From the IMG/VR virus record IMGVR_UViG_3300023174_005338, positions 124,001-188,000 of that record: DNA of 64,000 nucleotides. One strand, written 5' to 3'. Positions within the stretch are counted from its first letter, which is position 1; every line of letters begins with the position of its first letter. The position numbers were made by a program, and so were the translations under genes. This document shows positions 14,299 to 29,162 of this stretch, in pieces. The notes beneath the pieces were generated by a model, which was given only the letters and a program-made list of their open reading frames with translations, had not been told where the DNA came from and made no database searches.

Positions 14299-15144
14299 AT
14301 GAACTATCTTGTAATATATCCCGGCAGATTCCATCCGTTCCACCTAGGTCACAAGGCCAGCTATGATTGGTTGACCAATGAATTTGGTGAAAACTCAGTG
14401 TTTATAGCCAGCAGTGAAAAACAGGATCCTGAAACCAGTCCATTCAAATATGGCGACAAAGTGACCATGATGACCAAATTGGGTGTGCCCGCTGGGCGCA
14501 TCAAGAAAGTTACAAATCCTTATCAGGCCACGGAAATCACCTCCGCCCTGTCCGATGAAGAAAAGGCCAACACAGTGTTGGTATTTGCTGTCAGCGACAA
14601 AGATGCCCAGCGTTTCGATTATCGACCCAGAGCCGACGGTTCTCCGTCCTACCTACAACCCCTGCCCGAGAAAGAAAAAGCTATCAAGCCCATGACCCAG
14701 CATGGATATGTTGTGGTGACTCCCACAGTGAATTTCCGAGTACAAGGAGCAGATGCCAACAGCGCCAGCCAGATACGCAAACTTTATACAGCGGGCAACG
14801 ACAATGATCGAGATCAGATCATTGTGGATTTGTATGGCGCCGCTGACCCAGAACTACGGGACGTATTTGACAAGGCCCTGGGAGTCAACGAACCCCAGGA
14901 AGGCATAATTTACGGGCAAGAAGCGGTATTTGCTGGTGATAATCCTGTCAACGTCATGCGTGAAGAACGCCTGGCATGCCTGCGTGAAAATATGGAATAT
15001 CTACAACAGCGCATACAAAAGTTAAGAGATGGCCTGGACTACATTGATGAAAAATGGAGTCGTAAATACAAACGCAGTATCAACTGTGCCAGGCCACGAG
15101 GATTCAGCCAAAAGGCACACTGCGCCGGTCGCAAGAAAAAATAA
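14299..15144 (+). CDS. HxGH (cytidylyltransferase-like) nucleotidyltransferase with C-terminal basic two-Cys module
   Basis: PGRFHPFHLGH, SASQIR; ends IDE-KWSRKYKRSINC...HCAGRKKK. Confidence 0.75.
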   Translation: MNYLVIYPGRFHPFHLGHKASYDWLTNEFGENSVFIASSEKQDPETSPFKYGDKVTMMTKLGVPAGRIKKVTNPYQATEITSALSDEEKANTVLVFAVSDKDAQRFDYRPRADGSPSYLQPLPEKEKAIKPMTQHGYVVVTPTVNFRVQGADANSASQIRKLYTAGNDNDRDQIIVDLYGAADPELRDVFDKALGVNEPQEGIIYGQEAVFAGDNPVNVMREERLACLRENMEYLQQRIQKLRDGLDYIDEKWSRKYKRSINCARPRGFSQKAHCAGRKKK

Positions 15145-15159
15145 CAGCCTGTATAATCA

Positions 15160-15189
15160 CTAGTAAATATCACACAATTTACTAGAGGA
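15160..15189 (+). promoter_or_regulatory. Late promoter inside a 9-bp hairpin abutting the SD
   Basis: CTAGTAAAT 15160-15168 / ATTTACTAG 15177-15185; TAAATA 15164-15169; SD GAGGA 15185-15189. Confidence 0.65.
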
Positions 15190-15193
15190 ACTC

Positions 15194-16096
15194 ATGGCTG
15201 AAAACAAAGACGCAGTACCTACCACCCAAACTCCACAGGCACCAGCAACACAGCCAGGACAACAACAAATACAAGTCAACATTGATTATTTGAAGACCAC
15301 CCGAGTGCATATCTGCATGCCTTGTTATGGTGGCATGCTCACAGAAAGCACATTCATGAGCTATATCAAATGGTCAAATACCTGCCGACAATTGGGCATT
15401 GATTGGACCATGGAAACCATGACCAATGAAAGTCTTATTTCACGAGCCAGAAACACACTCACAGCCAAGTTCCTGCACAACAAAGATTCTACACATTTAA
15501 TGTTTATCGACGCCGACATTGGTTGGGAACCCTGGCACCTGTTGGTCATGCTGAATCGTGACGTGGATGTGATCGGTGGCCTGTACCCCATGAAGAGCCT
15601 GCCGGTGAAATGGTGTGTCAACGGCTTTGACGGTGCTGAAGAAGGTCCTGATGGCCTACAAGAAGTATCGAAAACAGGCACTGGATTCATGCTGATCAAG
15701 CGCCATGTGTTCGAAAAATTAAATGCACATCCAGCTACCCGCCCATTCATAAATGACATCGGCCTGCCAGCAGAACTCAATCCCTACATGAAGACCTACT
15801 TTGACACAGCAGTGCGTGAAAATCGCTACTATAGTGAAGACTGGACTTTCTGTGAAAACTGGCGTGATATAGGCGGCCGAGTCTGGGTAGACAAACGCAT
15901 CTTGTTGAAACACACTGGAACCTATGTGTTTGATTTCCAGACCCAGGATCAGTTGTACAAGGATCTACATGCCTTGGCTCAAGCCAGCGGCCAGGCTGCA
16001 CCAGTAAATGCTGTGCCGGCTCCAGTGGCAGACAAGCCGGTGGTAGCAAAAACCATTGCAACTAGCAAAAAAGACAAGAAGAAAGCCAAAGCCTAA
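15194..16096 (+). CDS. GT-A fold glycosyltransferase-like protein
   Basis: ICMPCYGG, SLISRARN, LMFIDADIGW (DxD), YSEDWTFC. Confidence 0.7.
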   Translation: MAENKDAVPTTQTPQAPATQPGQQQIQVNIDYLKTTRVHICMPCYGGMLTESTFMSYIKWSNTCRQLGIDWTMETMTNESLISRARNTLTAKFLHNKDSTHLMFIDADIGWEPWHLLVMLNRDVDVIGGLYPMKSLPVKWCVNGFDGAEEGPDGLQEVSKTGTGFMLIKRHVFEKLNAHPATRPFINDIGLPAELNPYMKTYFDTAVRENRYYSEDWTFCENWRDIGGRVWVDKRILLKHTGTYVFDFQTQDQLYKDLHALAQASGQAAPVNAVPAPVADKPVVAKTIATSKKDKKKAKA

Positions 16097-16114
16097 CCAG
16101 CGGTAAATACACTC

Positions 16115-19100
16115 ATGAACATCCATGAGTTAGATTCCTACGATTTAGGCGATGCTGTCAAGTTCAATGATCAGTTAAATCCACGCCTCTGGGGCGCAGA
16201 CGAAAAAATGCGTCCCGAAGTGCGTGAACAACTATTAAAAATCGCTGATGATTTCCGTGAATTCCTGGGCATAGATGTCGAAGTCAAGGACATCACTGTT
16301 TCAGGCAGTAACGCAGCCTATACCTATACTCCACATTCAGACATAGATCTACATCTGGTAGTTGACCTTCCCAAGGCTGATGCAAGTGAAGTTTATCGCG
16401 AGCTGTTTGATGCCAAAAAGTATGCATATAATGACATGCATGACATCCAGATTGGTGGTTATGATGTGGAACTGTATGTGCAAGATGCCAACAAACAGCA
16501 TCACAGTCAAGGCATCTACAGCATAATGAACAATGATTGGGTTGCAGTGCCTCGACGTCGCAGACCCGATGTGGACGACATCAGTGTAAAAAGCAAGTTT
16601 GAAGATCTCGGCCATCGTATTGAAGCGGCGATCAAAACTGGTGACTACGACAAGATTTCAACCATGGCCGAAAAGGTCCGAGAATATCGTCAAGCCGGCC
16701 TGGATGCTCACGGTGAGTTTGGTCCTGAAAATTTAGCATTCAAGATACTAAGAACTCAAGGACTAATCAAACAATTATACGACGCTCGTAACGCGGCCAA
16801 AGACGAACTGCTGAGCCTGGATGAGCGCCGAAAGAAAAAGAAACGCAAATCAGTACGATACGGCTACGGTGCTTACTGGTATCCGGGCACGGCCTATGCA
16901 GGCCAAGATCATCCTGCTGGTACCGAAGGTGGCGATGGCGGTGGTGACGGAGGCGGCGAAAGCATTAGAGAGTCTGTGGAAACCGCTGACGAAGACATAC
17001 TTCGAGATTTTGTGGATTTTTGTATCAAAGAATTAAAGATCAAACACATGCCACAAGTCAAACTACGCCGTGATCCACAATGGCCTGCGGTACACCGAAC
17101 CTTTGGTCGCTACAATGATGAAAACAAAACACTAGAAGTGGCCTGGGGACAACGTCACATCATGGATGTGCTAAGAACCGTGGCGCATGAACTCACACAC
17201 AAGCATCAACACGAGCGTGAAGGTGATCGCATGGGCCCCGACGCTGGCGAAACCGGCAGCCCTTATGAAAATGAAGCCAATGCTCGAGCTGGTGTGCTCA
17301 TGCGTGACTATGGTCGACTACACCCCGAATACTTTACCGTGGGCCAAGCACAGGGTCTGTCTGGGGATTCTATGCAAGAAACAGCACCCATAGGATTTGT
17401 CATGCCCGGCATGACCACAGATCCTGTCAAGGCCTGGAAACGACAAGTGCGTGATTTGATCCTGCAATACCGCGAGGATCCTACCAGACTGGCCGCGTTG
17501 GCCAAAGAAAAAGGTCCTGGCAGTGCCGAAGCGGTGGCCTATGCCTATATCAGAAACCCCACGGCACGTATTCCTTTGCCACCGGGTGTTGAGGTCAAGG
17601 AAAGCGCTAGTGGTTATATTCCAACAAAAAAGCAGGCCAAGGACCCAAGATTTTCAATGGCACTCACAGTGGATATCAAACCCGGACAAGTGGGCAAAGA
17701 AGCCAACAAGTTGAAATTAAAAACAGATCGCCAAGGACATCCACAGATAGCCCGTGCCAATGGCTTGTTTGAGGATTTGATGTTGGAATATCAACAGTTC
17801 AAAGAAAAAAAACTGTTTGCACTGGCCGCCGAAGACTACAGTCCAGACAATCCACCGGGCCCAGAGTTCAAGCCAACCATGCCAGCCGGCACGCTACGAG
17901 TAGATGTAAGCGATGTGTATGACTGGTACAAATTGGGACAACATATCGCCAATATGAAAGGCCTAGGCCAGCACGACTTTGGCAAAGGACCACCCAGCAC
18001 CATAATCAGCTTTGGTGATGAAGATGAAGAACACAAATTTATTGGGGATCTGGAAGCTACAGGCCTGGATGTCACAGACATTGACCCTCGTGATCCTGTA
18101 AAACGTCCAGGCAAAACAATCAAGACCGATCCCACTTACAATGTAAATGAATTTGCTCCCACGCCAGATCGTGATGACAACGATTACGTTCCAGATCAGT
18201 TGTTGATTTTGGCCAATCGCTGGTGGAATGCCACAGACAAGCAACCACAGATTGAGCATGTGCTAAACAGCCTAGGCTGGAGTATAGCACAGGTAGAGTC
18301 CGAAGATGATGCTGTGCAACTACAGCACCGTGATGGCACTACATATTTTATCAGTGCCGATGAATTTGATCCTGACCTATATGAAGTCAGTGATCAACGC
18401 CTGCAACAATACTTGAGCCGCGCTGGCCAACAAGTGGATCGCCGGCAAGAACGCATGGCCCAGGCTCGCGAACGCTTGAACAAGGGTTATGAAATCTATG
18501 ACGCCGAAGATCCCACTCGCATAGTGCATAGATTTGAAGCTGACACTCCTCAAGAAGCTCGACGCTACTACGAACAGTACAATGACAACTATGATAGTGA
18601 CGTGGACTACAATCTAAGACTGCGCCGCGCCACAGGTTTGATGGAAAGTGAAGAAGAGCTAGACGAAGTAAAAATGAGTCCTGGAGCCTTGGAAAAGTTT
18701 GCTACGTCTAATGCCGCAAAAGGTATACGTGCTGGCTTTGAAGCCGAACTCATATTCCGCGACACACAGGGCAGCAGCGATGACTTAGATCCTGAACCCG
18801 ACTACGATGCTGATGAGCGTGCCTACAGCATACAGCAGGTCATAGATTTTTTCAGCAACGATGATTATGGTTATGGACTCAGCGATCGTGAGCAAATGCG
18901 ACTCACTGACAACCTAGACGAAACTTATATGACATGGCGCGACGAGCAGATGATCAGCGACTTCCGCAACGACGCCGAAGACTTGATCCGTGAAAAACTG
19001 CTTGATGAAACTCCCCTGAGCGAACGCATACACTTGTATCTCACTGACAGTGAACAAATGTCAGACAAAGAGGCCGACCGGATCATAGCCGCCGGCGTAG

Positions 19101-21670
19101 ACGCACCTAAATTTGACACCAGCAAAGACCAAGCGGCCTATGCGGCACAAAATCCCTACTATCAAGCATACCTGGACGCTGTTGATGCAGTCGAGCTAGA
19201 ACTGGATGAATCAGTGGAATACAGTGTGAGCCGTGAAGACGAATACTGGGACGAAGCCTTGGATGATTACCGCGACAACTATTCCGGCGATGATGACAGT
19301 TTCTTTAGTGATGTGGGCCTGCGCTGGATGAGCGACATTGCCAACGAGTTTGGCCTGGATTGGCCTGTTTGGAACATGGACAGCGACCGCAACAACGGTT
19401 CACGCAGTTGGGAAGACATTGGTAGCGAACTACAGGCAGTGGTAGACATGCCAGTTGTGGTCAGCGATAACTATCATTCAACCCGTCGTAGACCCGGTCA
19501 GTGGATCATAGAACCCGACGGCAGTTTACATCCCGACGATCAAAGCGAAGAAGCTGGCTTGGAAATAGTCAGCCCACCCATGCCCTTGCTCACAGCCATT
19601 GAAAAATTAAAACAAGTCACGGACTGGGCCAATGATCCCAACGGTGGCAACGCTTATACCAATGGTACCACTGGCTTGCACATGGGCGTGAGCCTGCCTC
19701 GGTTTACCTCCGAAGATGCTGATTCAGATGCTGGCATAGACTATGTGAAACTGATCCTGTTCATGGGCGACAAGTATGTGCAACAACAGTTTGGTCGCGA
19801 AGCCAACAACTTCTGTGCCAGTGCCTTGGGCAAACTGCAACAAAACATCAAGGGCAAGAAATCAGATCCCGCAGGTGTGATCGAACTTCTGCGTCATGGA
19901 CTCACAGAACTAGCCTATAAAGAACTGCAAAAAGGTGTGGGCACCAGCAAGTATACTTCAGCACACATACAGGATGGCTACATTGAATTTCGTAGTCCGG
20001 GTGGTGACTGGTTGGCCAAGAGTGACGAAGAGATAGGCATACTAGAAAACACTATGTTGCGTTTTGCTAGAGCCATGGCCATAGCCGGCGACCCCAGTGC
20101 TGATCGCAAAGAATATGCCAAGAAGCTGTACAAGTTGGTCACCCAAGACAATGAACAGTATGCGGACCAACTACGCTTGTTCTCGGAGTTTTCGGCCGGC
20201 ACCATCAACAAAGAACAGCTCAAAAAACAGTGGGCTGATAGTGTGCTACGCAAAGAAATACCCACCACTGGCCAAGAAGAATACGAAGTCTACGATGCAA
20301 ACAAGAGTCGTAGTCCCGAGGGTGTGATCGACACATTCTATGCTCGGGACTACAATGATGCCTATGAGCAGTACACTAAAAAATACGTCAACGACCCTCG
20401 CTGGACACAGACTGATATACGCCTAAAACAACCATGGTTTGATGTGCAAGATGCTACGGGCAAAAACATACTGACCATGCGTGCTCCTGACATTGACAAA
20501 GCCACGCAACGGGTCCAATACGAATATGGCGAGAAGTCCCAGGACTGGAAAGTATATCGCAGACCCGATGAGTCACCTGAGCCAGAAAAGAAACTGAGTC
20601 CACGTGCTCAAGTGGCCAAGCGTATCACAACCAAACCAAAAACTGCGACCCAATTCAACTATGACATAGTGGATCAACGCACTGTAGAGTTGCGGGTAGT
20701 TGACAGGTTCCGTGCCGAAACACCAGCAGAAGCAGAAAAGATTTACAGTCAATGGTTGCAGAGCAAAGACCTGCCCGATGACACTGCCAACTATGGCTAT
20801 CGTAAAAATGCGCAGGCCGCAGACAATCAAAGAGATTCAGCAGATATACAACGCAGACTGGGTGTGCAGGATGTGGACACGGATGTGGCACAGAATTTTG
20901 GTCAGTCACAAGATGCCACACAAAGATCGGGTTCCTGGAGCATATATGATGTTACCCTGGGGCGCGAAATCACTAGGATGGACAATGTTCCATGGCAACA
21001 GGCCAACGATCGTGCCAACGAACTGGAACAAAGCACTGGACATAACATGTCAGTAAGAGGGCTATCTGAATCCATTGATCCCGTCAGCGGTGCTGGTGCT
21101 GTGAGTCCGAGACAAGATCCAAAAAACACGGGCAAGAAAGCTGTTACTCCAGCAGAAAAGGTCTTTAAGAATCCGGTCAAGGGCCAGCCTTACCGCAATG
21201 CCATTGGACAAGCCATCACCCAAAAAGACTTGGAAAACATGACACAACAGATACAAGTGGCCAGGAAGTTAGGCGACAGTGTGATGGAGATGGAAGATAC
21301 TCCGCCCGAAGTGTTGCGAGCATTGGACCAGGCTGCACAAAAAAATGGCTACAAGAACTGGGCAGATGTCAAGGCCAATCCTCGCAGTAGCAGTGCTGTA
21401 ATGACCGTGGCCAAGCTGGCTAACACTATCATGAAGACCACAGGTCCACATCATGAAAAATTGTTTTACAAGAATAAGACAGATGTAGATGAAAACTTTG
21501 CTGACGGAAAAAACCCTGGACGTAAAGGATTGAGCCGCAGGGTAGGTATTCCTAAAAAAGCCACACTGGGACAACTAGAAAAAATAGCCAAAAGTTCTAC
21601 AGGCGAGCGTCGCAAAATGGCACAGTGGCAGTTGAACATGCGTCGTGGAAAGGCAAAGAAAAACAAATGA
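16115..21670 (+). CDS. Giant polyvalent protein (1851 aa): Pol-beta-type nucleotidyltransferase, HExxH metallopeptidase, amidoligase-like domain, repeats
   Basis: GSNA...SDIDL...DVELY; HELTH...ENEANARA; GFEAE...EPDGSL...LEIVSPP...GLHMG...IEFR; TAAATA 16104-16109. Confidence 0.75.
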   Translation: MNIHELDSYDLGDAVKFNDQLNPRLWGADEKMRPEVREQLLKIADDFREFLGIDVEVKDITVSGSNAAYTYTPHSDIDLHLVVDLPKADASEVYRELFDAKKYAYNDMHDIQIGGYDVELYVQDANKQHHSQGIYSIMNNDWVAVPRRRRPDVDDISVKSKFEDLGHRIEAAIKTGDYDKISTMAEKVREYRQAGLDAHGEFGPENLAFKILRTQGLIKQLYDARNAAKDELLSLDERRKKKKRKSVRYGYGAYWYPGTAYAGQDHPAGTEGGDGGGDGGGESIRESVETADEDILRDFVDFCIKELKIKHMPQVKLRRDPQWPAVHRTFGRYNDENKTLEVAWGQRHIMDVLRTVAHELTHKHQHEREGDRMGPDAGETGSPYENEANARAGVLMRDYGRLHPEYFTVGQAQGLSGDSMQETAPIGFVMPGMTTDPVKAWKRQVRDLILQYREDPTRLAALAKEKGPGSAEAVAYAYIRNPTARIPLPPGVEVKESASGYIPTKKQAKDPRFSMALTVDIKPGQVGKEANKLKLKTDRQGHPQIARANGLFEDLMLEYQQFKEKKLFALAAEDYSPDNPPGPEFKPTMPAGTLRVDVSDVYDWYKLGQHIANMKGLGQHDFGKGPPSTIISFGDEDEEHKFIGDLEATGLDVTDIDPRDPVKRPGKTIKTDPTYNVNEFAPTPDRDDNDYVPDQLLILANRWWNATDKQPQIEHVLNSLGWSIAQVESEDDAVQLQHRDGTTYFISADEFDPDLYEVSDQRLQQYLSRAGQQVDRRQERMAQARERLNKGYEIYDAEDPTRIVHRFEADTPQEARRYYEQYNDNYDSDVDYNLRLRRATGLMESEEELDEVKMSPGALEKFATSNAAKGIRAGFEAELIFRDTQGSSDDLDPEPDYDADERAYSIQQVIDFFSNDDYGYGLSDREQMRLTDNLDETYMTWRDEQMISDFRNDAEDLIREKLLDETPLSERIHLYLTDSEQMSDKEADRIIAAGVDAPKFDTSKDQAAYAAQNPYYQAYLDAVDAVELELDESVEYSVSREDEYWDEALDDYRDNYSGDDDSFFSDVGLRWMSDIANEFGLDWPVWNMDSDRNNGSRSWEDIGSELQAVVDMPVVVSDNYHSTRRRPGQWIIEPDGSLHPDDQSEEAGLEIVSPPMPLLTAIEKLKQVTDWANDPNGGNAYTNGTTGLHMGVSLPRFTSEDADSDAGIDYVKLILFMGDKYVQQQFGREANNFCASALGKLQQNIKGKKSDPAGVIELLRHGLTELAYKELQKGVGTSKYTSAHIQDGYIEFRSPGGDWLAKSDEEIGILENTMLRFARAMAIAGDPSADRKEYAKKLYKLVTQDNEQYADQLRLFSEFSAGTINKEQLKKQWADSVLRKEIPTTGQEEYEVYDANKSRSPEGVIDTFYARDYNDAYEQYTKKYVNDPRWTQTDIRLKQPWFDVQDATGKNILTMRAPDIDKATQRVQYEYGEKSQDWKVYRRPDESPEPEKKLSPRAQVAKRITTKPKTATQFNYDIVDQRTVELRVVDRFRAETPAEAEKIYSQWLQSKDLPDDTANYGYRKNAQAADNQRDSADIQRRLGVQDVDTDVAQNFGQSQDATQRSGSWSIYDVTLGREITRMDNVPWQQANDRANELEQSTGHNMSVRGLSESIDPVSGAGAVSPRQDPKNTGKKAVTPAEKVFKNPVKGQPYRNAIGQAITQKDLENMTQQIQVARKLGDSVMEMEDTPPEVLRALDQAAQKNGYKNWADVKANPRSSSAVMTVAKLANTIMKTTGPHHEKLFYKNKTDVDENFADGKNPGRKGLSRRVGIPKKATLGQLEKIAKSSTGERRKMAQWQLNMRRGKAKKNK

Positions 21671-22206
21671 TAATCAATGAAATAATCACCAAAAGTCCAA
21701 GCCGTTATGGTGGAGGAGCTCCTAGCATGTCGGCCCAGCGTATGACCGCTCCGAACACCACTACACCGCGTGGCTTTTCGGATCCAATTTTTGTCAAACG
21801 TGCCAAGCAAGAAAAATACAATCGAGAAAAACAGTTCAAAGCCCTGGCTACTGCCAAAGAGAAGTTTGATTTTTTATATGGCTTGGAAAAAGGAAAAAGC
21901 ACCAACCAGATCCGTATACAAGGACCTAGCAATTTGACATATCACATTCAGCAGTATAATCCAGTCACAGGAGATATAGTGTTGTTACTCAAAGGACTGC
22001 AGTCTGACGATACAATCAAGGGTAACACCAGCAATTTTGTTTACCAAGGGCGACAGGCATCTGGGGCCACTGGACCAAAAATCTATATTTTTATTCCACA
22101 AGATCTGACCACGATCTCGTCTGAGCCCAAGATCAAAAAAACCAACAGAGGCAGGCCCACCGGCCCTGTCAAGAAACAATACAAGTTTCCTCCTAATCCT
22201 TGGTGA
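21667..22206 (+). CDS. Hypothetical basic protein with CTS-like N-terminus
   Basis: MIINEII at ATGA overlap. Confidence 0.6.
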   Translation: MIINEIITKSPSRYGGGAPSMSAQRMTAPNTTTPRGFSDPIFVKRAKQEKYNREKQFKALATAKEKFDFLYGLEKGKSTNQIRIQGPSNLTYHIQQYNPVTGDIVLLLKGLQSDDTIKGNTSNFVYQGRQASGATGPKIYIFIPQDLTTISSEPKIKKTNRGRPTGPVKKQYKFPPNPW

Positions 22207-22211
22207 TATAA

Positions 22212-23396
22212 ATGAGAGCACAAGAGCTGGGATCCGGCAAGCTGGTCATATTTGACATTGATGACACCTTGGTCAACACCGACACTAGAGTCAATGTGGT
22301 GCAGGATGGCCGAGTCATCAAGCAGTTGAACAGCCACGATTTCACACACTACAAACTGGCACCCGGTGAAACATTTGACTTTGGAGCATTCAAGGATGCC
22401 AGAGAGTTCTTTACCAAGGCCCGACCTATTCCTGGCATGATCAAACAGCTAAAGCATGACATAGCCACAGGTAACAGAGTGATCATGCTCACAGCACGCA
22501 GTGACTTCAATGACCGTGATGTGTTCTTGGACACATTCCGCAGATTTGGCATAGACATGGACCGGGTCCACGTATATCGTGCTGGCAATCTTGCCATCAA
22601 AGCGGCCACCGAAGAAAAGAAAAAAATCATACTCAAGCATTTACTGGGCAAAGAGCACTTTGACAAGCTGATCATGTACGATGATTCAGTGCCCAACCTT
22701 AATGCTTTCTTGAGCTTGAAGCAGGATTATCCCTACAGCAAATTTTATGCCTGGCATGTGGACCCCAATGGACAAGCTAGTGAATATCATAGAACCGATG
22801 AAGGACAAGTCATGGAGATCGCACGTATACCTGTGGGAGATTTTGGGGACAAAGACAATCTCATACCCATGAGTGAACCACGCAGTTCACGACCTTTGCC
22901 CGGAGGATCAGGCCTGAGCTATCATGTCAAAAACATGCATAACAAAAAACAAATCACCATGTTTGACCAAGGGCAGTTGGTGGCCGAAATGGATCTCATA
23001 GACAGCATTTATCCGGCCAACACCTGGGAAGTCGAAGGCATAGTGGTAGATCCTGACTACCGAGGTCGTGCCTTGGGCTTGGCCTTGTACGGCATAGCAC
23101 TCAGTGAGCTCCGACTTACCTTGAAAGCGGGCCGCACACAGACCCGCCACGGCAGGGCCATGTGGCTCAAGCTGAATCAGATACCTGGAGTTGAAATACG
23201 TGGAGTAACTCGAGCACGACGCAACCAGTACAAGCCTAGACCCAGCAATGAAATCCTAGCACAAAATCAACAATATGTGTGGTACACTTTTGCTGTGGAA
23301 CCAGGTGCTCAAAGCATGCGCAGCGGTCAGCGCGGAGTGGCCTTGTACAGCTACGACACACCCAGTACCATGATAGCACAGTGGAGAGGCCAATGA
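22212..23396 (+). CDS. HAD-family phosphatase fused to GNAT-like domain, CTS-like N-terminus
   Basis: MRAQEL; IFDIDDTL, MLTARS, MYDDSVPNL; second domain VDPDYRGRALGLALY, QTRHGRAMW. Confidence 0.75.
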   Translation: MRAQELGSGKLVIFDIDDTLVNTDTRVNVVQDGRVIKQLNSHDFTHYKLAPGETFDFGAFKDAREFFTKARPIPGMIKQLKHDIATGNRVIMLTARSDFNDRDVFLDTFRRFGIDMDRVHVYRAGNLAIKAATEEKKKIILKHLLGKEHFDKLIMYDDSVPNLNAFLSLKQDYPYSKFYAWHVDPNGQASEYHRTDEGQVMEIARIPVGDFGDKDNLIPMSEPRSSRPLPGGSGLSYHVKNMHNKKQITMFDQGQLVAEMDLIDSIYPANTWEVEGIVVDPDYRGRALGLALYGIALSELRLTLKAGRTQTRHGRAMWLKLNQIPGVEIRGVTRARRNQYKPRPSNEILAQNQQYVWYTFAVEPGAQSMRSGQRGVALYSYDTPSTMIAQWRGQ

Positions 23397-23581
23397 AAGC
23401 CCGAGAAATATATCCCAAATACAAGTTGTGGACTGCCCCTGTGCGCATACAGCAACCCAACTACGTAGGCTACATTGATGTTACGGTCACAGCCGACAAT
23501 CAGCAGGATGCCCGCAGGCTCATGCGAGCCCAGTATGGGGTGGCCGACTGGCACATAGGTAGCGTAAAGGAAGTGCGATGA
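23393..23581 (+). CDS. Small protein (62 aa), CTS-like N-terminus
   Basis: MKAREI; ATGA overlaps. Confidence 0.65.
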   Translation: MKAREIYPKYKLWTAPVRIQQPNYVGYIDVTVTADNQQDARRLMRAQYGVADWHIGSVKEVR

Positions 23582-24315
23582 GCATCACAGTCACAGGCGG
23601 CACAGCCGTCATAAACGGTGACTACACTGTTCGCACCTTTGAATCATCGGGTACACTCACAGTCTCAGGAGGCACACTGGCCAATGTTCAATACTTGCTT
23701 GTAGCTGGTGGCGGTCAAGCTGCTTTCCCTACCAGCACCTATGTGGCCGGTGGTGGTGCAGGCGGAGCCATGACCGGTAATATCAATTTAAATTCAGGCA
23801 GTTATCCTGTGGTCATTGGTGCCATTGGAAACAACAGCACGTTCTTGAACATGACAGCCATTGGCGGCGGTCAGGGCGGATTTTACGGCAACGGCAGCAG
23901 TGGTGGATCTGGCGGTGGAGGTGGAACCCTGGGTACCACACATATAAATTTTGCAAGTTTTGTTGGCGGAAACGGCACACCCGGACAGGGTTACAACGGT
24001 GGAGCACCCTATGGCGGTGGATATCCACCATTTGGACCAGGTGGGGGCGGTGGCGCAGGCGGTCAAGGCGGCAAAGGCTCACCCGATGGAGTAGGTGGTG
24101 TAGGTGGGCTTGGTCTAGCCAGCAACATAACTGGCAATGTTGTCTATTATGCTGCAGGCGGCAGTGGAATAGGCCCCCAAGGAATTGGCAACAACAATCC
24201 TGGCTACAAGAACTATGGTGCTGGAGGTGGCTATGATATAGCCGATGGTCCCACCTACTATGATCGATTGCCCGCACAGCCCGGTGTGCTCATAATCAGA
24301 TACCCTACACCCTAG
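23578..24315 (+). CDS. Glycine-rich phage protein
   Basis: LLVAGGG...GGGAGG, GGSGGGGG, GVLIIRY pattern. Confidence 0.75.
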   Translation: MSITVTGGTAVINGDYTVRTFESSGTLTVSGGTLANVQYLLVAGGGQAAFPTSTYVAGGGAGGAMTGNINLNSGSYPVVIGAIGNNSTFLNMTAIGGGQGGFYGNGSSGGSGGGGGTLGTTHINFASFVGGNGTPGQGYNGGAPYGGGYPPFGPGGGGGAGGQGGKGSPDGVGGVGGLGLASNITGNVVYYAAGGSGIGPQGIGNNNPGYKNYGAGGGYDIADGPTYYDRLPAQPGVLIIRYPTP

Positions 24316-24339
24316 CAATCGGCACCAGCTAAATACCTT

Positions 24340-24627
24340 ATGAACCGGTATTTTGTACAAGTGCTAGCCGATGTAAACTGCGAATGGGAAGGACTGGATC
24401 CTGTGTATCGCGTGTATGTCAACGAAGAACTATTTGCTGAACGTAGCTGGCGCTGGACTGATGCATATCTGGAAGAAATGTTGCAGATCGAAGCAGAACC
24501 TGGAGAATACCGACTGCGCTGGGAACTGGTACAGCCTTGCCTGGCACGACTCACTGTCAGTAATGTGCGTGTGGATCAGGGTCCAGCAAGCGTAAAAAAC
24601 AATGAACTGCTAAGGATAACTGGATGA
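24340..24627 (+). CDS. Hypothetical protein (95 aa)
   Basis: TAAATA 24330-24335 upstream. Confidence 0.65.
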   Translation: MNRYFVQVLADVNCEWEGLDPVYRVYVNEELFAERSWRWTDAYLEEMLQIEAEPGEYRLRWELVQPCLARLTVSNVRVDQGPASVKNNELLRITG

Positions 24628-24812
24628 GAGCTAGTGAATTTATAGTAGAAACAACTGTAAGCGGCAGTATTGCTTCAGTGGCCATGCCCCTGGGCGGCAT
24701 GATCACAAGAAATGCTGGATCTTTCTTTTCTGGTAAATACTCTAATAGTGCGGATCCGTATCCTAATACACCTGCCTACATGAAAAAAGGAAAAAAGCCT
24801 CGTGCTCGCTGA
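24624..24812 (+). CDS. Small basic protein with CTS-like N-terminus (62 aa)
   Basis: MRASEFIVE then GSIASVAMPLG and a K/R-rich end. Confidence 0.65.
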   Translation: MRASEFIVETTVSGSIASVAMPLGGMITRNAGSFFSGKYSNSADPYPNTPAYMKKGKKPRAR

Positions 24813-25242
24813 TTTGTTAAAAGTTTATCTAGCTTCAACATTTGCTTATTATTTGAAAGCACACTATTTCCACTGGAACGTGGAAGGCCCAGATTTTGGC
24901 CAACTGCACAAGTTTTTCCAAAAAATCTACGAAGATGCGTTTGGAGCTGTAGATCCCATTGCCGAATACATAAGAACCACAGAAGAATATGCACCCGGAA
25001 GTTTTGAACGCTTCCAAGAACTCACACAGATACAGGGACAGACCAAGGTTCCCCGTGCCCGATTAATGTTAGAAGAATTGCTCGCAGACACACAGACCAT
25101 GAAGGACATGAGCAAGCAGTTGTTTGATGCTGCCACAGCCGAAGGTCGTGAAGATGTAGCCAATTTTGCTGCCGAGCGCCAAAGCGCACACGGCAAGTAC
25201 ATGTGGCAGATCCGGAGTTATCTGAAAGACGCAAGGGCATGA
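24802..25242 (+). CDS. dps: Dps/ferritin-like DNA-protection protein
   Basis: HYFHWNVEGPDF..LHKFF..IYE...D.IAEYIR; HGKYMW. Confidence 0.85.
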   Translation: MLADLLKVYLASTFAYYLKAHYFHWNVEGPDFGQLHKFFQKIYEDAFGAVDPIAEYIRTTEEYAPGSFERFQELTQIQGQTKVPRARLMLEELLADTQTMKDMSKQLFDAATAEGREDVANFAAERQSAHGKYMWQIRSYLKDARA

Positions 25243-25245
25243 ACC

Positions 25246-26037
25246 GTGGCACAAGACCATAACGACATCTATACCATTGTGGAAAAACTGGCCATCCTGG
25301 AAGGCCGTATCACTCCCACTGGTGTAAAAAAAGGTCTCAACCCACAACAGCGATCAGTGCCACAGATGCCGGCCCTGTTCAAGCCAAAGACACAAAAAAT
25401 ACTAGGCGGCAATCCCAATGCCAAGAATCCCATGTCAGGCTACATGGTAGGCAGTGATGAAAGTGTGGAACGTGAAGAGGCAGTGCTGGAAGCCGAAATG
25501 GCCGAAGATGTCCTTGAAAAAGTAAAAAAATCATTCAAAGATTTTATCCGACAAGCCGAAGAACAAATCAAAGACAGCGACATCAAAGAAAAGAAACAAG
25601 AAGACACAGATCTCAAAAGCCGAGATGCCAAGGATCGGGATCTCATAGTCAAGGTAGCCCCAGTCGCTGAAGATCCCACTGACAGTGAAGAAGACCAAGA
25701 AGAATGGTACGATGCCAATGGCCGTCCCGACGAATATGGTTGTTATGATGCCGGCGGCCACTATCATGCCGAACGTGAGTCAGACATGGATGCTGGATAC
25801 GATGCTTACAAAGAGCGCAATTGGACTGACGAATCAGCTCCAGTTAAAACTTTAACCAACGAGTGTGGCCTTTGGGAAATGCATGGCAACGAGCGTGATG
25901 GCTTTGAAATTCGTCGGGCTGGTCGTTGCTTACCTACCCGCTTTAAGAATTTAGACGAAGCCGAGATGGCTGTAGAAATGTTCGCACATCGCCGCAGAAT
26001 GGCCGACGAGTCACAAGATTACCTGGATGAAGAATAA
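25246..26037 (+). CDS. Acidic modular hypothetical protein
   Basis: GTG start; several hydrophobic-x-E junctions. Confidence 0.65.
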   Translation: MAQDHNDIYTIVEKLAILEGRITPTGVKKGLNPQQRSVPQMPALFKPKTQKILGGNPNAKNPMSGYMVGSDESVEREEAVLEAEMAEDVLEKVKKSFKDFIRQAEEQIKDSDIKEKKQEDTDLKSRDAKDRDLIVKVAPVAEDPTDSEEDQEEWYDANGRPDEYGCYDAGGHYHAERESDMDAGYDAYKERNWTDESAPVKTLTNECGLWEMHGNERDGFEIRRAGRCLPTRFKNLDEAEMAVEMFAHRRRMADESQDYLDEE

Positions 26038-29000
26038 TGTTAAGCCTAGATTTATTTAATTCACGATATGAGAAAAAATTGCACGAAGGTGCAGTAGATG
26101 ATGCAGAATATGCTCGCCTTAAAAAACTTGGCGAAAAGATTGATTACCTAAAACAAGCACGGGCCAAGACCACGGATGCCGAAATGCAACGTGCCATAGA
26201 TGGGCGTATCAAAGAATACAACGACGAACGCATGGAGATTCTCAGTGTGCGTGGCATGAAAGAAGCCGAACAACCCACACAACGTCCCAGCAAACAAGAT
26301 CCATTCGCTTATGTCAAGCCTGATCCCCAAGGAATTGGTGACACGCAAGATCCTAAACAAAAGATGGCGCAGTTGACACAACGGGCCAAGAAAGGTCACC
26401 TGGCCAATGTAGGTGCAGGCATCAAGGCTTTTATCAAAGGCGAACCCGAGCCCATGGACGAAGAACAACAAACAGTAAATCCTCGTGCTCTAGGTGTGGC
26501 CAATTTCCAACGCCTGGTCAAGGCCAACATGGGCAACATCCCCACTGTGAATTTGGAATTCATCCGACCCGAAGAAAACTTCAAATTAGATCAAAAAGGT
26601 CTAGATCTGATCAGTGATTATTACGATGGCCTGGAAAGTGACCAAGCCAAAAATTATTTCATCTATCGTGTGTTGCCCAGTGGTGACGAAACTAAAAAAA
26701 TCCTCAAACAACTAGGTTGGACCACACAACAAGTACAACCATCCTTGCCCGGCATACCCACACAGGGCGAACTGCCGTTGCAAGAAAAAAAAAAGTCTAA
26801 CAACGACGATCTAGAAGCCGGTGATGTCAAGGTAGCACGCGAATTACAAAAATTACGTGCGAGATATCCTGCTGTGCGTAGCGACATTGAAGCTGTGGCC
26901 AGTGCAGAAATAGACAGCACAGAACGCAGTCAACAACAACTGGCAGCCATACGTGGTGCCAATGACAAACAAGATGCCCTACTCAAACAGTTGGTTGATC
27001 TGGACAAACAACAAGGTCGCGAAATTGACGGCTTAGACAAAGAAAACAACAGTTTGGAACAACGCCTAGCACAGGTACAGGCCACCAATGATCGACTGCA
27101 ACAGACCATTGGTCAAATGACCGGCACCAAAAAAGCTGCCACTAAAACCAAAACAACTGCGCCACAAGGCTCTGCTGACGTGGCCCAGGGCGGCATAATT
27201 GATGTGGGTGCTCCAATGGCATCAATGCCCAATGCAACTACAGTGGCACCGGCGTCCAACACAACATCGACGACCAGCAATAAAGCTATGAAATACACGT
27301 CTCAACAAATACAAGGACTTGGTCAAGTAGCACCTGATATTAGAGGTAAAGCCGCTAATGATGGTGATCAACAAACAAAAAAAGTTTCAGGATCTGACAT
27401 CGAGGAACACGGTGGTGGCATAGGTCCCCGGCAACACTGGCAAGACCTCATGCAGGAAGGTCAACCACAAGAACTCATACATCGCTATCTGGCCATCAAC
27501 GCAGAAACCGATGTAGATGCTGTCAGAAAGGCCATACAGGCCATCAGTAGGGATCCTGCCTTGGGTGCAAACAGCAAAGCTCGACTACTGGGACAGATTG
27601 GCATGATAATCAAGCGGCATCGCTTGCCCATTGGTAGATCATACTATCAGTTCATGCAACAGTACATGGAAGAACAAAGTGTCACTGAAACAGTAGAAAA
27701 TGTTCGAGCAGGCATGGCTCGAATATATCGCCGCCTGGCACCTAAAATCGAACGCCATCGTGACAGCTTCCTTGCCGGCCAACTGTATGACGAGTTGGAA
27801 AACTATGCTGAACTGCATGGTGCCGAAGGCGAGTTCAAACGCATGATGGCCACGGCTAGGAATAGTGCGCACATGGAATATGACACCAATCCTGGTGGTT
27901 TCCAAAACTGGTTCTGGTTCCTGCCGTTTGAAGACAACGATGTGGATGAGGCTATCAGCAAAAAAGACTTGCTTGCTAAACTACAAAAGAATTTGCCAAA
28001 AGTCAATGATCCAAAAAACAAACACGCCAAACCAGTTAACTGGACCGGTGCTGGTAAAGATGATTATGGATACACAGGTTATCAAGGCCACGGTATGCCC
28101 ACTGATAAACAAGAACGAGCTCGTATCCGTGCTGATAAGAAAAAAGGTGTAGCGGAAGGTACCGATGATATCAAAAAGAAAATGTCCAAGTTGGAAGCAC
28201 TGGCTCTGGCGGCCAATCGTGCCGGTGATGATGCAAAATGCAAAATGTATCAGCAAAAGATCCAATCACTCAAACAAAAACTGTCGCAAAGCATGGCAGA
28301 AGGCTGGAGTGATCAGGGCAACCCCACCCCTTATTCAGTCTACATCGACGGACGTGAATGGCGTGCCTACAAGAGTGATGATCATGCCCGTGCTGTGGCA
28401 GAAAAAGTTCGGGCCAATTTAAAACGCCAAGGTCGCGATCAAACAGTTACCATAGCACCCAGCAAAACTAAAAAGGTACAGGAAGATTTTGGCATGCCTG
28501 GCACAACAATTCCACGCAAGAGTCTCATACAAGGCTACACAGTGTTTTGGAATCCTACTACACAAGTGGTCAGTGTCACACGTGGTGGCGACAGCGAAGA
28601 AGCGGCCATTGAACAAGCAAGAGTTGGCACACCTAGCATGAAGAATTTCCGCCAAGCGGCTGACAGATTGATTGACAGGATAGAAAGCGATTTAACAGAA
28701 AACTTAACCCGCGAACCGCGCACAGCTCGTGAACGTGATGAAATGATCGACAAGATACGCAGAATGATGACGCAGGATCGAAATCCGGCCAATCTACAGA
28801 TCATGAAGAAGGATATAGAAATCCTGCAGACCAGGTATCGTGATCTCAAGGAAGACAGCGACAGTGGTAAAGCAGTGGAAATGGCCATCATGCGCAGAAT
28901 GTTGGTGGCACACACTGATCTCATAGTAGAATTTGGTCTGGACAAGGTAGTCGATGCCATAGAAGAAGTGGCCTACAACGTGGGTGACACTGACGAGATT

Positions 29001-29162
29001 GGCAGCAGTGATGTGAGTGGTTGGGTCAATCAAGTCAAACAGATCCTGGGCGTGCCTGAAGATCTAGATGAGAAGTGGAGTGCCAAATACAAAAAGAGCA
29101 TTAATTGTAGTAACCCAAAAGGATTCTCACAAAAAGCTCATTGTGCGGGAAGGAAAAAATGA
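26037..29162 (+). CDS. Large modular protein (1041 aa) with coiled coil and C-terminal basic two-Cys module
   Basis: About 14 hydrophobic-x-E junctions; ends LDE-KWSAKYKKSINC...HCAGRKK. Confidence 0.7.
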   Translation: MLSLDLFNSRYEKKLHEGAVDDAEYARLKKLGEKIDYLKQARAKTTDAEMQRAIDGRIKEYNDERMEILSVRGMKEAEQPTQRPSKQDPFAYVKPDPQGIGDTQDPKQKMAQLTQRAKKGHLANVGAGIKAFIKGEPEPMDEEQQTVNPRALGVANFQRLVKANMGNIPTVNLEFIRPEENFKLDQKGLDLISDYYDGLESDQAKNYFIYRVLPSGDETKKILKQLGWTTQQVQPSLPGIPTQGELPLQEKKKSNNDDLEAGDVKVARELQKLRARYPAVRSDIEAVASAEIDSTERSQQQLAAIRGANDKQDALLKQLVDLDKQQGREIDGLDKENNSLEQRLAQVQATNDRLQQTIGQMTGTKKAATKTKTTAPQGSADVAQGGIIDVGAPMASMPNATTVAPASNTTSTTSNKAMKYTSQQIQGLGQVAPDIRGKAANDGDQQTKKVSGSDIEEHGGGIGPRQHWQDLMQEGQPQELIHRYLAINAETDVDAVRKAIQAISRDPALGANSKARLLGQIGMIIKRHRLPIGRSYYQFMQQYMEEQSVTETVENVRAGMARIYRRLAPKIERHRDSFLAGQLYDELENYAELHGAEGEFKRMMATARNSAHMEYDTNPGGFQNWFWFLPFEDNDVDEAISKKDLLAKLQKNLPKVNDPKNKHAKPVNWTGAGKDDYGYTGYQGHGMPTDKQERARIRADKKKGVAEGTDDIKKKMSKLEALALAANRAGDDAKCKMYQQKIQSLKQKLSQSMAEGWSDQGNPTPYSVYIDGREWRAYKSDDHARAVAEKVRANLKRQGRDQTVTIAPSKTKKVQEDFGMPGTTIPRKSLIQGYTVFWNPTTQVVSVTRGGDSEEAAIEQARVGTPSMKNFRQAADRLIDRIESDLTENLTREPRTARERDEMIDKIRRMMTQDRNPANLQIMKKDIEILQTRYRDLKEDSDSGKAVEMAIMRRMLVAHTDLIVEFGLDKVVDAIEEVAYNVGDTDEIGSSDVSGWVNQVKQILGVPEDLDEKWSAKYKKSINCSNPKGFSQKAHCAGRKK

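What the first reader, a model, noticed from the sequence alone, without database searches (positions are those of the whole stretch)
15046..29162. The same ~31-aa basic two-Cys module ends two unrelated proteins 14 kb apart
DE-KWSRKYKRSINCARPRGFSQKAHCAGRKKK (15046-15144, on an HxGH nucleotidyltransferase) and DE-KWSAKYKKSINCSNPKGFSQKAHCAGRKK (29067-29162, on the 1041-aa protein). Both follow a hydrophobic-D-E junction. This is direct evidence that modules move between genes. It may be a released DNA-condensing peptide or a C-terminal packaging tag.
Basis: seen in the sequence. Interest (0 to 1): 0.6.

Follow-up and report, generated by a model that had tools for sequence, protein, structure and literature searches.

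The report
Mobile basic peptide module, T4-like phages
A 30-residue, strongly basic, two-cysteine mini-domain that ends two unrelated proteins of this 337-kb T4-like jumbo phage is a free-standing building block found in thousands of different aquatic phage proteins, and its flanks suggest that the head protease cuts it out as a small peptide inside the capsid.

Summary
The same roughly 30-aa module (KWS…GFSQKAHC…GRKK) ends a 281-aa HxGH nucleotidyltransferase and a 1041-aa orphan protein. It is the only similarity between them (26/32 identical, E 4e-16). Synonymous sites are saturated, so the copies are old and held by selection.

The module is not tied to one family. A profile finds it in 2,772 protein clusters (cut-off 50% identity). 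It occurs N-terminal, internal, C-terminal, or as stand-alone 40-aa ORFs. Partner domains include Cu/Zn SOD, deaminase, NT5C, ParB_N, lysozyme and nucleotidyltransferases. Among cultured phages it occurs in nine T4-like cyanophage species, and apart from nine contigs binned into bacterial MAGs, every carrier was viral.

Two flank features point to a mechanism:
- The module is almost always preceded by hydrophobic-x-Glu, the T4 gp21 cleavage motif. Four unrelated neighbouring modules share this junction.
- Most carriers start with a 9–10-aa leader like the T4 capsid-targeting sequence.

This genome encodes T4-type portal, S77 protease and gp23.

Best reading, inferred and not shown: the module is cargo of capsid-targeted internal proteins and is released by the prohead protease as a +9 peptide in the head. 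Pfam, PHROGs, NCBIfam, the PDB and the searchable literature do not describe it.

The parts
14299..15144 (+). Carrier 1: 281-aa HxGH (cytidylyltransferase/NMNAT-like) nucleotidyltransferase with no N-terminal leader. The enzyme core is residues 1 to about 195, followed by a low-confidence linker and helix, then the module.
   Evidence: Pfam PF01467, 31.6 bits. phrog_395. NCBIfam NMNAT models match below cut-off. AF2 model has a confident core up to about residue 195 and low confidence for 198-261. Homologue L027 keeps the fusion (37% identity, E 1e-50). Homologues in LR756508 and Microcystis phage Mel-JY01 match only the body.
15043..15141 (+). Module A, copy 1: junction I-D-E, then K-W-S … C … H-C … G-R-K-K-K, then stop.
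26037..29162 (+). Carrier 2: 1041-aa orphan protein. The leader MLSLDLFNSRYE is of the same type as leaders that directly precede module A in other phages (for example MLTIDLFE|KWS in L022). The module is at the C-terminus.
   Evidence: No Pfam, PHROG or NCBIfam hit. Homologues L010 (1260 aa) and L011 (987 aa) keep the leader and the terminal module.
29064..29159 (+). Module A, copy 2: junction L-D-E, then the module, then stop.
29159..30229 (+). Next gene, of the phrog_727 / T4-GC119 type. Its ATG overlaps the stop of carrier 2 (…AAAAAATGA…). It has the leader MRYQEILE|A and then three other two-Cys basic modules, each preceded by L/I-x-E.
   Evidence: phrog_727 E 1e-42. Translation. Sequence of the overlap. 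The same 4-nt overlap between a module-A ORF and a phrog_727 gene occurs in S-SM2, Bellamy and SynMITS9220M01. T4-GC119 was detected in S-SM1 virions.
21494..21667 (+). A different basic terminal module (NFADGK type, Cys-less variant), placed after V-D-E at the end of the 1851-aa NTP_transf_2 + Amidoligase_2 protein (16115-21670).
24624..24812 (+). 62-aa basic protein with the CTS-like leader MRASEFIVE. It is part of the local cluster of leader-bearing genes.
30655..31293 (+). dCMP/cytidine deaminase with the CTS-like leader MRISDFRIE. The same enzyme family is fused to module A in L059 and L028.

Best explanation
Module A is an autonomous mini-domain of about 30 residues: helix, loop, helix, two Cys and one His, net charge +9. 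It belongs to a kit of small basic Cys-pair modules that T4-like aquatic phages shuffle among their capsid-targeted 'internal' proteins. Carriers are proposed to enter the prohead through a 9-10-residue N-terminal leader of the T4 capsid-targeting (CTS) type. The T4-type S77 prohead protease, which cuts after L/I-x-Glu, would then cut at the hydrophobic-x-Glu junction just before the module, and at a Glu site just after it when it is internal. This would release a free basic peptide that stays with the packaged DNA, where it probably neutralises or condenses DNA and leaves the head with it.

Shown: the module's existence, its autonomy, its huge spread, its near-restriction to viral sequence, one copy per genome in most phages, purifying selection, the flank motifs, the leaders, and the T4-type head genes.

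Inferred: capsid targeting, cleavage, and residence in the head.

Guessed from charge only: DNA binding.

The leaderless nucleotidyltransferase (carrier 1) is the least well explained case.
For: 1. Autonomy and spread.
- The module occurs in 79 distinct ORFs of 39-1314 aa, at every position. These include about ten 40-aa ORFs that are only leader plus module.
- A profile search finds 2,772 representative clusters. Of the top 150, 55 are N-terminal, 61 C-terminal and 33 internal.
- The partner domains are unrelated to each other.

2. Junctions.
- Glu is at -2 in 78/79 and L/I/V/M/F at -4 in 77/79.
- After internal copies, the first Glu lies 7-9 residues past the second Cys in 114/127. A Phi-x-E occurs within 15 residues in 72/127, against 24.8 +/- 4.3 in shuffles.
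- Four unrelated modules carry the same upstream junction: NFADGK 28/28 with Glu, DLRxWF 6/6, CWxGY 12/18, PSAYA 9/14.
- S-SRM01 starts directly at M-G-W-S, so the junction is not needed for the module itself.

3. Leaders.
- T4 ipII and ipIII start MKTYQEFIAE|A and ipI starts MKTFKEF.
- Stand-alone module ORFs start MKTFKQFQE|G and MKSFKQFQE|S. Metagenomic carriers start MRAKEFITE|K, MKIKEILSE|K and the like.
- 61% of carriers have such a leader, against 6% of ORFs in this genome.
- gp21 specificity (L/I-X-E), the 10-residue CTS, and processing of Alt at both ends are documented in PMC9026906.

4. Machinery.
- This genome has Peptidase_S77 (90.6 bits), Portal_T4 and Gp23, plus a gp23 propeptide rich in Phi-x-E.
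- S77 is present in 4 of 8 long carrier contigs, including the only complete one.
- All cultured carriers are T4-like Kyanoviridae.

5. Virion link.
- T4-GC119, the phrog_727 family that contains or directly follows the module in cyanophages and in this window, was detected in S-SM1 virions. So was the cytidylyltransferase T4-GC190 (PMC3037559 Table S8).
- S-SM2 GC190 starts MKSFFQFLSE|A.

6. One copy per genome in nine cyanophages and four long contigs, each time in a different carrier. This suggests the peptide itself, not the carrier, is the selected product.

7. Purifying selection: pN/pS 0.16 over 74 distinct module DNAs.
Against: - No direct evidence that any module-A carrier is in a virion or is cleaved.
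- The Phi-x-E before the module could simply be the conserved start of its first helix. The AF2 model starts helix 1 at that Glu.
- P1' is mostly Lys, whereas T4 sites recalled from the literature usually have a small residue there.
- The first Glu after the module (K-N-E) has no hydrophobic residue at P3.
- Carrier 1 and its homologue L027 have no leader, so their route into a prohead is unexplained.
- The carriers in this genome lie among replication and nucleotide-metabolism genes, not in the head block. T4 ip genes are also scattered.
- No T4-type late promoter was seen before them.
- The leader motif used for counting is loose: 32% of neighbouring ORFs in carrier loci also match it. That may mean clustering of targeted genes, or low specificity of the motif.
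Confidence: 0.55

Rival explanations
1. The module is an uncleaved nucleic-acid-binding tail. It tethers enzymes of nucleotide or DNA metabolism to phage or host DNA or RNA in the infected cell, and it is never in the virion.
For: Charge of +9 in 29 residues. Many partners act on nucleotides or DNA: nucleotidyltransferase, NT5C, dCMP deaminase, ParB_N, and a KxDG ligase-like DUF6267. Carrier 1 has no leader and sits among replication-type genes.
Against: Stand-alone 40-aa ORFs consist only of a CTS-like leader plus the module. Other partners, such as Cu/Zn SOD, lysozyme and an HExxH peptidase-like domain, have no reason to sit on DNA. There is usually one copy per genome rather than one per DNA enzyme. 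The junction motif is shared with unrelated modules.
Confidence: 0.2
2. The module is itself a packaging or targeting element, for example a C-terminal counterpart of the CTS, or an adaptor that pairs with another copy through its Cys/His residues. It would carry leaderless proteins such as the nucleotidyltransferase into the prohead and would then be clipped off.
For: Carrier 1 and L027 lack a leader but keep the module after I-D-E / I-E-E. In cyanophages a related enzyme family (GC190) is a virion protein and uses an N-terminal CTS-like leader instead. T4 Alt and gp21 have C-terminal propeptides. In the related NFADGK module the two Cys covary perfectly, so they act as a pair.
Against: A leader plus module with no cargo would be a tag on a tag. 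Most carriers already have a leader. The module sits anywhere in the chain, including between two enzymes (L028, L051).
Confidence: 0.13
3. The module is an inert spacer between domains of polyproteins, or a chance-conserved low-complexity tail with no function of its own.
For: It lies between enzyme domains in L028 (nucleotidyltransferase, module, deaminase) and L051 (NT5C, module, ParB_N).
Against: 16 of 32 columns are invariant and mean identity is 88% across 62 distinct copies, with saturated synonymous sites. It exists as stand-alone ORFs. The sequence is not low-complexity, and the predicted helix-loop-helix has pLDDT 75.
Confidence: 0.04
4. The two window copies are remnants of a whole-gene duplication, or a recent intragenomic recombination.
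For: None beyond the shared tail.
Against: The two proteins share nothing else. Synonymous sites between the copies are saturated. Each carrier has homologues elsewhere that keep its own body plus the module (L027; L010 and L011).
Confidence: 0.01

Closest known systems
T4 internal proteins IPI, IPII, IPIII and Alt, with their capsid-targeting sequence (CTS) and gp21 processing
   Same: Both have a short N-terminal leader ending in L/I-x-Glu. Compare T4 MKTYQEFIAE|A and MKTFKEF with MKTFKQFQE|G, MRAKEFITE|K and MRYQEILE|A here. Both occur in phages that encode the S77 protease, gp20 and gp23. The cargo is basic, the genes are variable and scattered, and enzymes can be cargo (Alt in T4). Processing at both ends is known for Alt.
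   Different: There is no sequence similarity beyond the leader. Here the cargo is built from shuffled modules of about 30-60 aa with Cys pairs, separated by further Glu sites, so one precursor could yield several peptides and enzymes. None of this has been shown experimentally. Carrier 1 lacks the leader.
T4-GC119 / phrog_727 / phrog_3477 'structural protein' of T4-like cyanophages, with Pfam DUF5872 overlapping parts of it
   Same: The gene after carrier 2 belongs to this family (phrog_727, E 1e-42). In five cyanophages module A lies inside such proteins, and in three it ends a small ORF that overlaps their start by 4 nt, as in this window. GC119 was detected in S-SM1 virions.
   Different: The PHROG and Pfam models do not cover module A itself: there is no hit on the isolated module. 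Module A also occurs on many proteins outside this family. A profile comparison with the PKCLPQSKAH stretch of the neighbouring protein is not significant (E 0.29).
phiKZ/201phi2-1/SPN3US inner-body and ejection proteins processed by a gp21-like protease
   Same: Jumbo-phage heads loaded with many proteins that are cut after Glu at short motifs, with redundant sites (PMC9026906).
   Different: The motif there is S/A-x-E and the protein families are different. This phage has a canonical T4-type head gene set.
Adenovirus core peptide mu (from precursor pX) and protein VII. This comparison is from my own knowledge and was not checked with a tool.
   Same: A small, very basic peptide released from a precursor by the virion protease, which stays with and condenses the packaged genome.
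   Different: An unrelated virus, protease and sequence. This is an analogy of mechanism only.

Membership tests
T4-type capsid-targeted internal head proteins | N-terminal leader of about 10 residues ending in L/I-x-Glu (CTS) | tested here: met
   Met for carrier 2 (MLSLDLFNSRYE|K), for the neighbouring gene (MRYQEILE|A) and for 38 of 62 complete carriers. T4 leaders were read from NC_000866. NOT met for carrier 1, whose enzyme fold starts at residue 4.
T4-type capsid-targeted internal head proteins | The phage encodes a gp21-type (Peptidase_S77) prohead protease with T4-type portal, scaffold and major capsid protein | tested here: met
   PF03420 90.6 bits, PF07230 351 bits and PF07068 325 bits, all in one block at genome positions 286.8-292.8 kb.
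T4-type capsid-targeted internal head proteins | Cleavage after Glu at L/I-x-E by the prohead protease | not testable with these tools
   The motif is present, but cleavage itself needs mass spectrometry or an enzyme assay. A complex prediction of protease with the junction peptide gave no answer.
T4-type capsid-targeted internal head proteins | Physical presence in the mature head | not testable with these tools
   Indirect evidence only: T4-GC119 and the cytidylyltransferase T4-GC190 were detected in S-SM1 virions. The S-SCSM2R virion list was not available. The module yields only tryptic peptides of 8 residues or fewer, so standard shotgun proteomics would tend to miss it (inference).
Cytidylyltransferase-like nucleotidyltransferases (PF01467) - carrier 1 only | Rossmann-like fold with an HxGH motif near the N-terminus and a second S-x-S/T-x-I-R type motif | tested here: met
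   PF01467 scores 31.6 bits against a cut-off of 21. H-L-G-H lies at residues 15-18 and S-A-S-Q-I-R near residue 157. Both are conserved in L027 and L028. The AF2 core is alpha/beta. The substrate is unknown: NMNAT models match only below cut-off.
DUF5872 / phrog_727 modules | Match of the isolated module to the family model | tested here: not met
   No Pfam or PHROG hit for either isolated copy at E up to 10 (Pfam) or 1 (PHROGs). hhalign against the neighbouring phrog_727 protein gives E 0.29.
Zinc knuckle / zinc ribbon | Four metal ligands (Cys/His) in one unit | tested here: not met
   Only C15, H26 and C27 are invariant. A site shared between two chains, or a disulfide, remains possible. 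Cys-pair covariation was seen in the related NFADGK module.

The most novel reading that the evidence does not exclude
Aquatic T4-like phages, including this 337-kb jumbo phage, may use a combinatorial capsid-cargo kit with three parts: a CTS-type leader, protease-site junctions, and a set of Cys-pair basic mini-modules. The kit would load polyproteins into the prohead, and the prohead protease would then cut them into free DNA-binding peptides and free enzymes (Cu/Zn SOD, dCMP deaminase, 5'-nucleotidase, NMNAT-like transferase, ParB-type nuclease, lysozyme). These would be injected with the genome. If so, a large unrecognised arsenal of virion-delivered enzymes exists, and it could be read directly from sequence by its leaders and junctions.
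Probability: 0.35. Interest if true: 0.8.

Novelty: new variant of a known kind. Interest (0 to 1): 0.62.

Why it matters
If the reading holds, a simple sequence grammar (leader, Phi-x-E junction, mini-module) would allow prediction of which proteins T4-like marine and freshwater phages carry inside their heads and inject into hosts such as Synechococcus and Prochlorococcus. Tryptic virion proteomics is largely blind to these lysine-rich peptides. It would also give one of the most widespread unnamed phage modules (more than 2,000 clusters at 50% identity) a testable role. The module would be a natural example of domain shuffling at protease-site boundaries. It could also yield a compact DNA-binding peptide and new targeting leaders for T4-type capsid engineering.

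Tried and rejected
- Pfam, PHROGs and NCBIfam on the isolated module: no hit.
- PDB sequence search with the profile: only a chance match to PvuII, E 0.69.
- Foldseek of the 32-residue model against the PDB: nothing.
- ESM Atlas: only unnamed viral clusters.
- hhalign of the module against the neighbouring protein's PKCLPQSKAH stretch: E 0.29, so no kinship can be claimed.
- Complex prediction of the S77 protease with the 45-residue junction peptide: no answer. This is not evidence for or against binding.
- Megablast of 16.5 kb of the window against cultured phages: no match.
- T4 late-promoter consensus TATAAATA: four hits in the window (1.17 expected by chance), none before either carrier. 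Timing of expression is therefore unknown.
- S-SCSM2R virion proteome: the main text does not name ORF176 and no supplement is held. The S-SRM01 paper has no proteomics.
- Literature search for the motifs themselves and for DUF5872: nothing relevant.
- Whole-gene duplication: rejected.
- AF2 of the whole nucleotidyltransferase with four sequences: mean pLDDT only 58.5. It was used only to show that the tail is separated from the core by a low-confidence stretch.
- Not used: the search for homologous proteins, read laying, the look-up of sequencing runs, and any non-standard genetic code.


Full report

Yes. The carriers are two ORFs:
- ORF 14299-15144, 281 aa. Pfam CTP_transf_like at 31.6 bits, with HLGH at residues 15-18 and SASQIR near residue 157.
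- ORF 26037-29162, 1041 aa, with no family hit.

BLASTP between the two proteins finds only the module: 26/32 identical, E 4e-16. Everything else has E > 0.5. The two DNA copies are about 74% identical. Synonymous sites are saturated (pS about 1.0) while pN is 0.18. The copies are therefore ancient and are kept alike by selection on the peptide, not by recent recombination. The whole genome is an IMG/VR virus record of 337,119 bp with direct terminal repeats, rated 100% complete, and the window is positions 124,001-188,000. It holds exactly these two copies.

**2. Where else is the module?**

Cultured phages:
- tblastn finds the module in 17 records, which represent nine species. All are T4-like cyanophages (Kyanoviridae or close), with one copy per genome.
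- In SynMITS9220M01 and Bellamy it is a stand-alone ORF of 39 or 51 aa. In S-SM2 it ends a 142-aa protein.
- In S-SRM01 it begins a 609-aa protein, directly as M-G-W-S. In S-CAM9, S-PRM1, DSL-LC02, S-SCSM2R and P-TIM68 it is internal.

Metagenomic viruses and protein clusters:
- In IMG/VR more than 555 stretches encode the module. The 80 loci fetched, together with the cyanophages and the window, give 79 distinct carrier ORFs of 39-1314 aa.
- A profile of 62 copies searched against 1.84 billion representative proteins finds 2,772 clusters at E <= 1e-3 and 2,045 at E <= 1e-10. Of the 150 best, 55 carry it just after the start, 61 at the very end and 33 inside.

Partner domains:
- Sod_Cu, dCMP_cyt_deam_1, ParB_N, NT5C, CTP_transf_like, Phage_lysozyme, DUF6267, DUF3008, DUF7230, DUF5872, and an HExxH peptidase-like domain seen by eye.
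- Several carriers look like polyproteins: nucleotidyltransferase-module-deaminase, nucleotidyltransferase-NT5C-module, and DUF3008-NT5C-module-ParB_N.

Cellular genomes:
- Among one genome for each of 185,579 prokaryote species, only nine contigs carry it. All nine are in metagenome-assembled genomes from aquatic samples and none is from an isolate, so these are probably phage contigs binned with bacteria.

Each window carrier has homologues that keep its own body plus the module: L027 for the transferase (37% identity), and L010 and L011 for the 1041-aa protein. Other homologues of the transferase lack the module. The module is a mobile, self-contained unit.

**3. Anatomy**

Sixteen of 32 columns are invariant: E3, W5, K8, Y9, K10, I13, C15, P18, G20, F21, S22, Q23, K24, A25, H26 and C27. 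The scan pattern GFSQKAH inflates part of this, but the independent cyanophage and profile hits agree. AF2 with this alignment predicts helix (3-11), loop (12-20, holding C15), helix (21-31, holding H26 and C27), at pLDDT 75.5. From the residue after the junction Glu to the last Lys, the peptide has nine Lys/Arg and no acidic residue in 29 positions. In the full transferase model, the tail is separated from the enzyme core by a low-confidence stretch (residues 198-261).

**4. The flanks carry the main clue**

Upstream:
- Glu is at -2 from the Trp in 78/79 carriers and L/I/V/M/F is at -4 in 77/79, while -3 varies.

Downstream of internal copies:
- The first Glu lies 7-9 residues after the second Cys in 114/127 flanks.
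- A full hydrophobic-x-Glu falls within 15 residues in 72/127, against 24.8 +/- 4.3 in shuffled flanks, with a peak at +11.

The same upstream junction precedes four unrelated modules in these loci:
- NFADGK: Glu in 28/28.
- DLRxWF: 6/6.
- CWxGY…PNC: 12/18.
- The PSAYA module: 9/14.

In the gene after carrier 2, all three modules follow I-L-E, L-A-E and L-D-E.

Hydrophobic-x-Glu is the published cleavage motif of the T4 prohead protease gp21 (L/I-X-E, cut after Glu; PMC9026906). A junction shared by unrelated modules is easier to explain as a processing signal than as part of each fold. S-SRM01, whose protein starts at M-G-W-S, shows that the module does not need the junction.

**5. The carriers look capsid-targeted**

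T4 leaders, read from NC_000866:
- ipII and ipIII begin MKTYQEFIAE|A, and ipI begins MKTFKEF.
- The first ten residues are the capsid-targeting sequence.

Leaders on module carriers and related proteins:
- The stand-alone cyanophage module ORFs begin MKTFKQFQE|G and MKSFKQFQE|S. S-SM2's 142-aa carrier begins MKTLKQFLKE.
- Metagenomic carriers begin MRAFEFLTE|K, MKIKEIVAE|K, MRAKEFITE|K and similar.
- Carrier 2 begins MLSLDLFNSRYE|K. That leader type directly precedes module A in L022 (MLTIDLFE|KWS).
- The next gene begins MRYQEILE|A.

By a loose pattern, 61% of carriers have such a leader, against 32% of neighbouring ORFs in carrier loci and 6% of ORFs in this genome. In the window, further leader-bearing genes surround the carriers: 24624 (62 aa), 30226, and 30655 (a deaminase). 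The genome has a second cluster at 321-326 kb, including a gene beginning MKNFQEYLAE|S.

**6. The machinery is present**

The genome encodes, in one block, the following:
- A T4-type portal (286,839-288,662).
- An acidic core-like protein.
- Peptidase_S77 (289,865-290,503).
- A coiled-coil scaffold-like protein rich in Phi-x-E.
- gp23 (291,643-292,839), with an N-terminal stretch holding four Phi-x-E sites before the Pfam Gp23 match starts.

Four of eight long carrier contigs also have S77, including the only complete one. The other four are 23-73% complete.

**7. Link to virions (indirect)**

In five cyanophages the module lies inside proteins of the phrog_727/3477 family. In three it ends a small ORF that overlaps the start of such a gene by 4 nt. 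The window shows the same arrangement: the stop of carrier 2 and the ATG of the phrog_727-type gene overlap in …AAAAAATGA….

That family is T4-GC119, since S-SM2 SSM2_109 is annotated so. Sullivan et al. 2010 list GC119 as detected in purified S-SM1 virions (13 counts). They also list the cyanophage core 'cytidylyltransferase' T4-GC190 as detected (25 counts) (PMC3037559, Table S8). S-SM2 GC190 begins MKSFFQFLSE|A and is weakly similar to carrier 1 in the transferase domain (E 0.002). A transferase of this superfamily is therefore a documented virion protein in T4-like cyanophages.

**8. Most likely mechanism**

Carriers would enter the prohead core through the leader. The S77 protease would cut at the Glu junctions. 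Module A would be freed as a +9 peptide that remains with the DNA. One copy per genome in most phages, each time in a different vehicle, fits the idea that the peptide is the selected product. DNA binding is a guess from charge.

The Cys pair may form a disulfide in the extracellular virion or share a metal. In the related NFADGK module the two Cys are either both present (20 copies) or both replaced (9 copies), never one alone.

Carrier 1 has no leader. Either it is not packaged, and the tail acts in the cell (rival 1), or the tail helps it into the head (rival 2).

**9. Comparison with known systems, and novelty**

The system works like T4 internal proteins, the CTS and gp21 processing, and like the processed inner-body proteins of phiKZ-type phages. 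The adenovirus mu peptide is a functional analogy from my own knowledge. Membership in 'T4-type internal proteins' is met for leader and machinery, and is untestable here for cleavage and virion residence.

Module A itself matches no Pfam, PHROG or NCBIfam model and no PDB entry. The Atlas holds only unnamed viral clusters. No paper in the library holds the motif. I rate it a new variant of a known kind.

Noticed in passing
window 16115-21670 (module at 21494-21667): An 1851-aa protein with NTP_transf_2 and Amidoligase_2 domains and net charge -77. It ends, after V-D-E, with a different basic terminal module (NFADGK type, Cys-less variant). It is a third protein inside the finding's span with a shuffled basic tail.
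   Followed up: partly
loci L012-L080 and window 21494-21667: In the NFADGK module the two cysteines covary perfectly over 29 distinct copies: both present in 20, and both replaced (second position Gln) in 9. They therefore act as a pair, either a disulfide or a shared metal site.
   Followed up: partly
window 29154-29162: The stop of the 1041-aa gene and the ATG of the next gene overlap in AAAAAATGA. This fits translational coupling. The A6 run would also allow a -1 slip that fuses the two proteins, which would mimic cyanophages where module A lies inside phrog_727 proteins. The same 4-nt overlap is seen in S-SM2, Bellamy and SynMITS9220M01.
   Followed up: no
window 29159-30229: A 356-aa protein (phrog_727, net charge +23) built of three other two-Cys basic modules (CWTGY…PNCVP; DLKKWF…C…KCLP; DACY…WPSAYASG…C). 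Each is preceded by L/I-x-E. Pfam DUF5872 matches below its cut-off.
   Followed up: partly
window 24624-24812, 30226-30654, 30655-31293: Further genes with CTS-like leaders (MRASEFIVE, MRELITLVE, MRISDFRIE). The last is a dCMP/cytidine deaminase, a domain fused to module A in other phages. The span from 14 to 31 kb may be a block of capsid-targeted proteins.
   Followed up: partly
genome G000:C1 321129-326150 (outside the window): Four adjacent genes have T4-like leaders (MKNFQEYLAE, MKSLKDYITE, MRAREFLAE, MRAREFITE). The one at 323667-324413 ends with …HNCDNPG…KARYWSC…, a Cys-pair motif reminiscent of module A that the profile does not detect.
   Followed up: no
window 24802-25242; 31921-32823; 10349-12625; 37994-40651: A ferritin/Dps-like protein (PF00210, E 6e-21), a radical-SAM protein, a Lon-like ATP-dependent protease (phrog_4871, 779 bits) and a T4-type DNA polymerase (phrog_262).
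   Followed up: no
loci L028, L035, L051, L074, L086: Metagenomic carriers that look like polyproteins: nucleotidyltransferase-module-deaminase; nucleotidyltransferase-NT5C-module; DUF3008-NT5C-module-ParB_N; leader-DUF7230-Cu/Zn SOD-module; module-lysozyme.
   Followed up: partly
loci L093-L101: Nine contigs filed under bacterial MAGs carry the module (Pelagibacter TMED166, Rickettsiales MED657, Haliscomenobacter, Dojkabacteria, Acidimicrobiaceae and others). They are probably phage contigs binned into MAGs. At best they hint at hosts.
   Followed up: no
locus L006 (Synechococcus phage S-SCSM2R): An annotated NMNAT gene lies directly upstream of that phage's 815-aa module-A carrier. This echoes the NMNAT-like transferase that carries the module in this window.
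   Followed up: no
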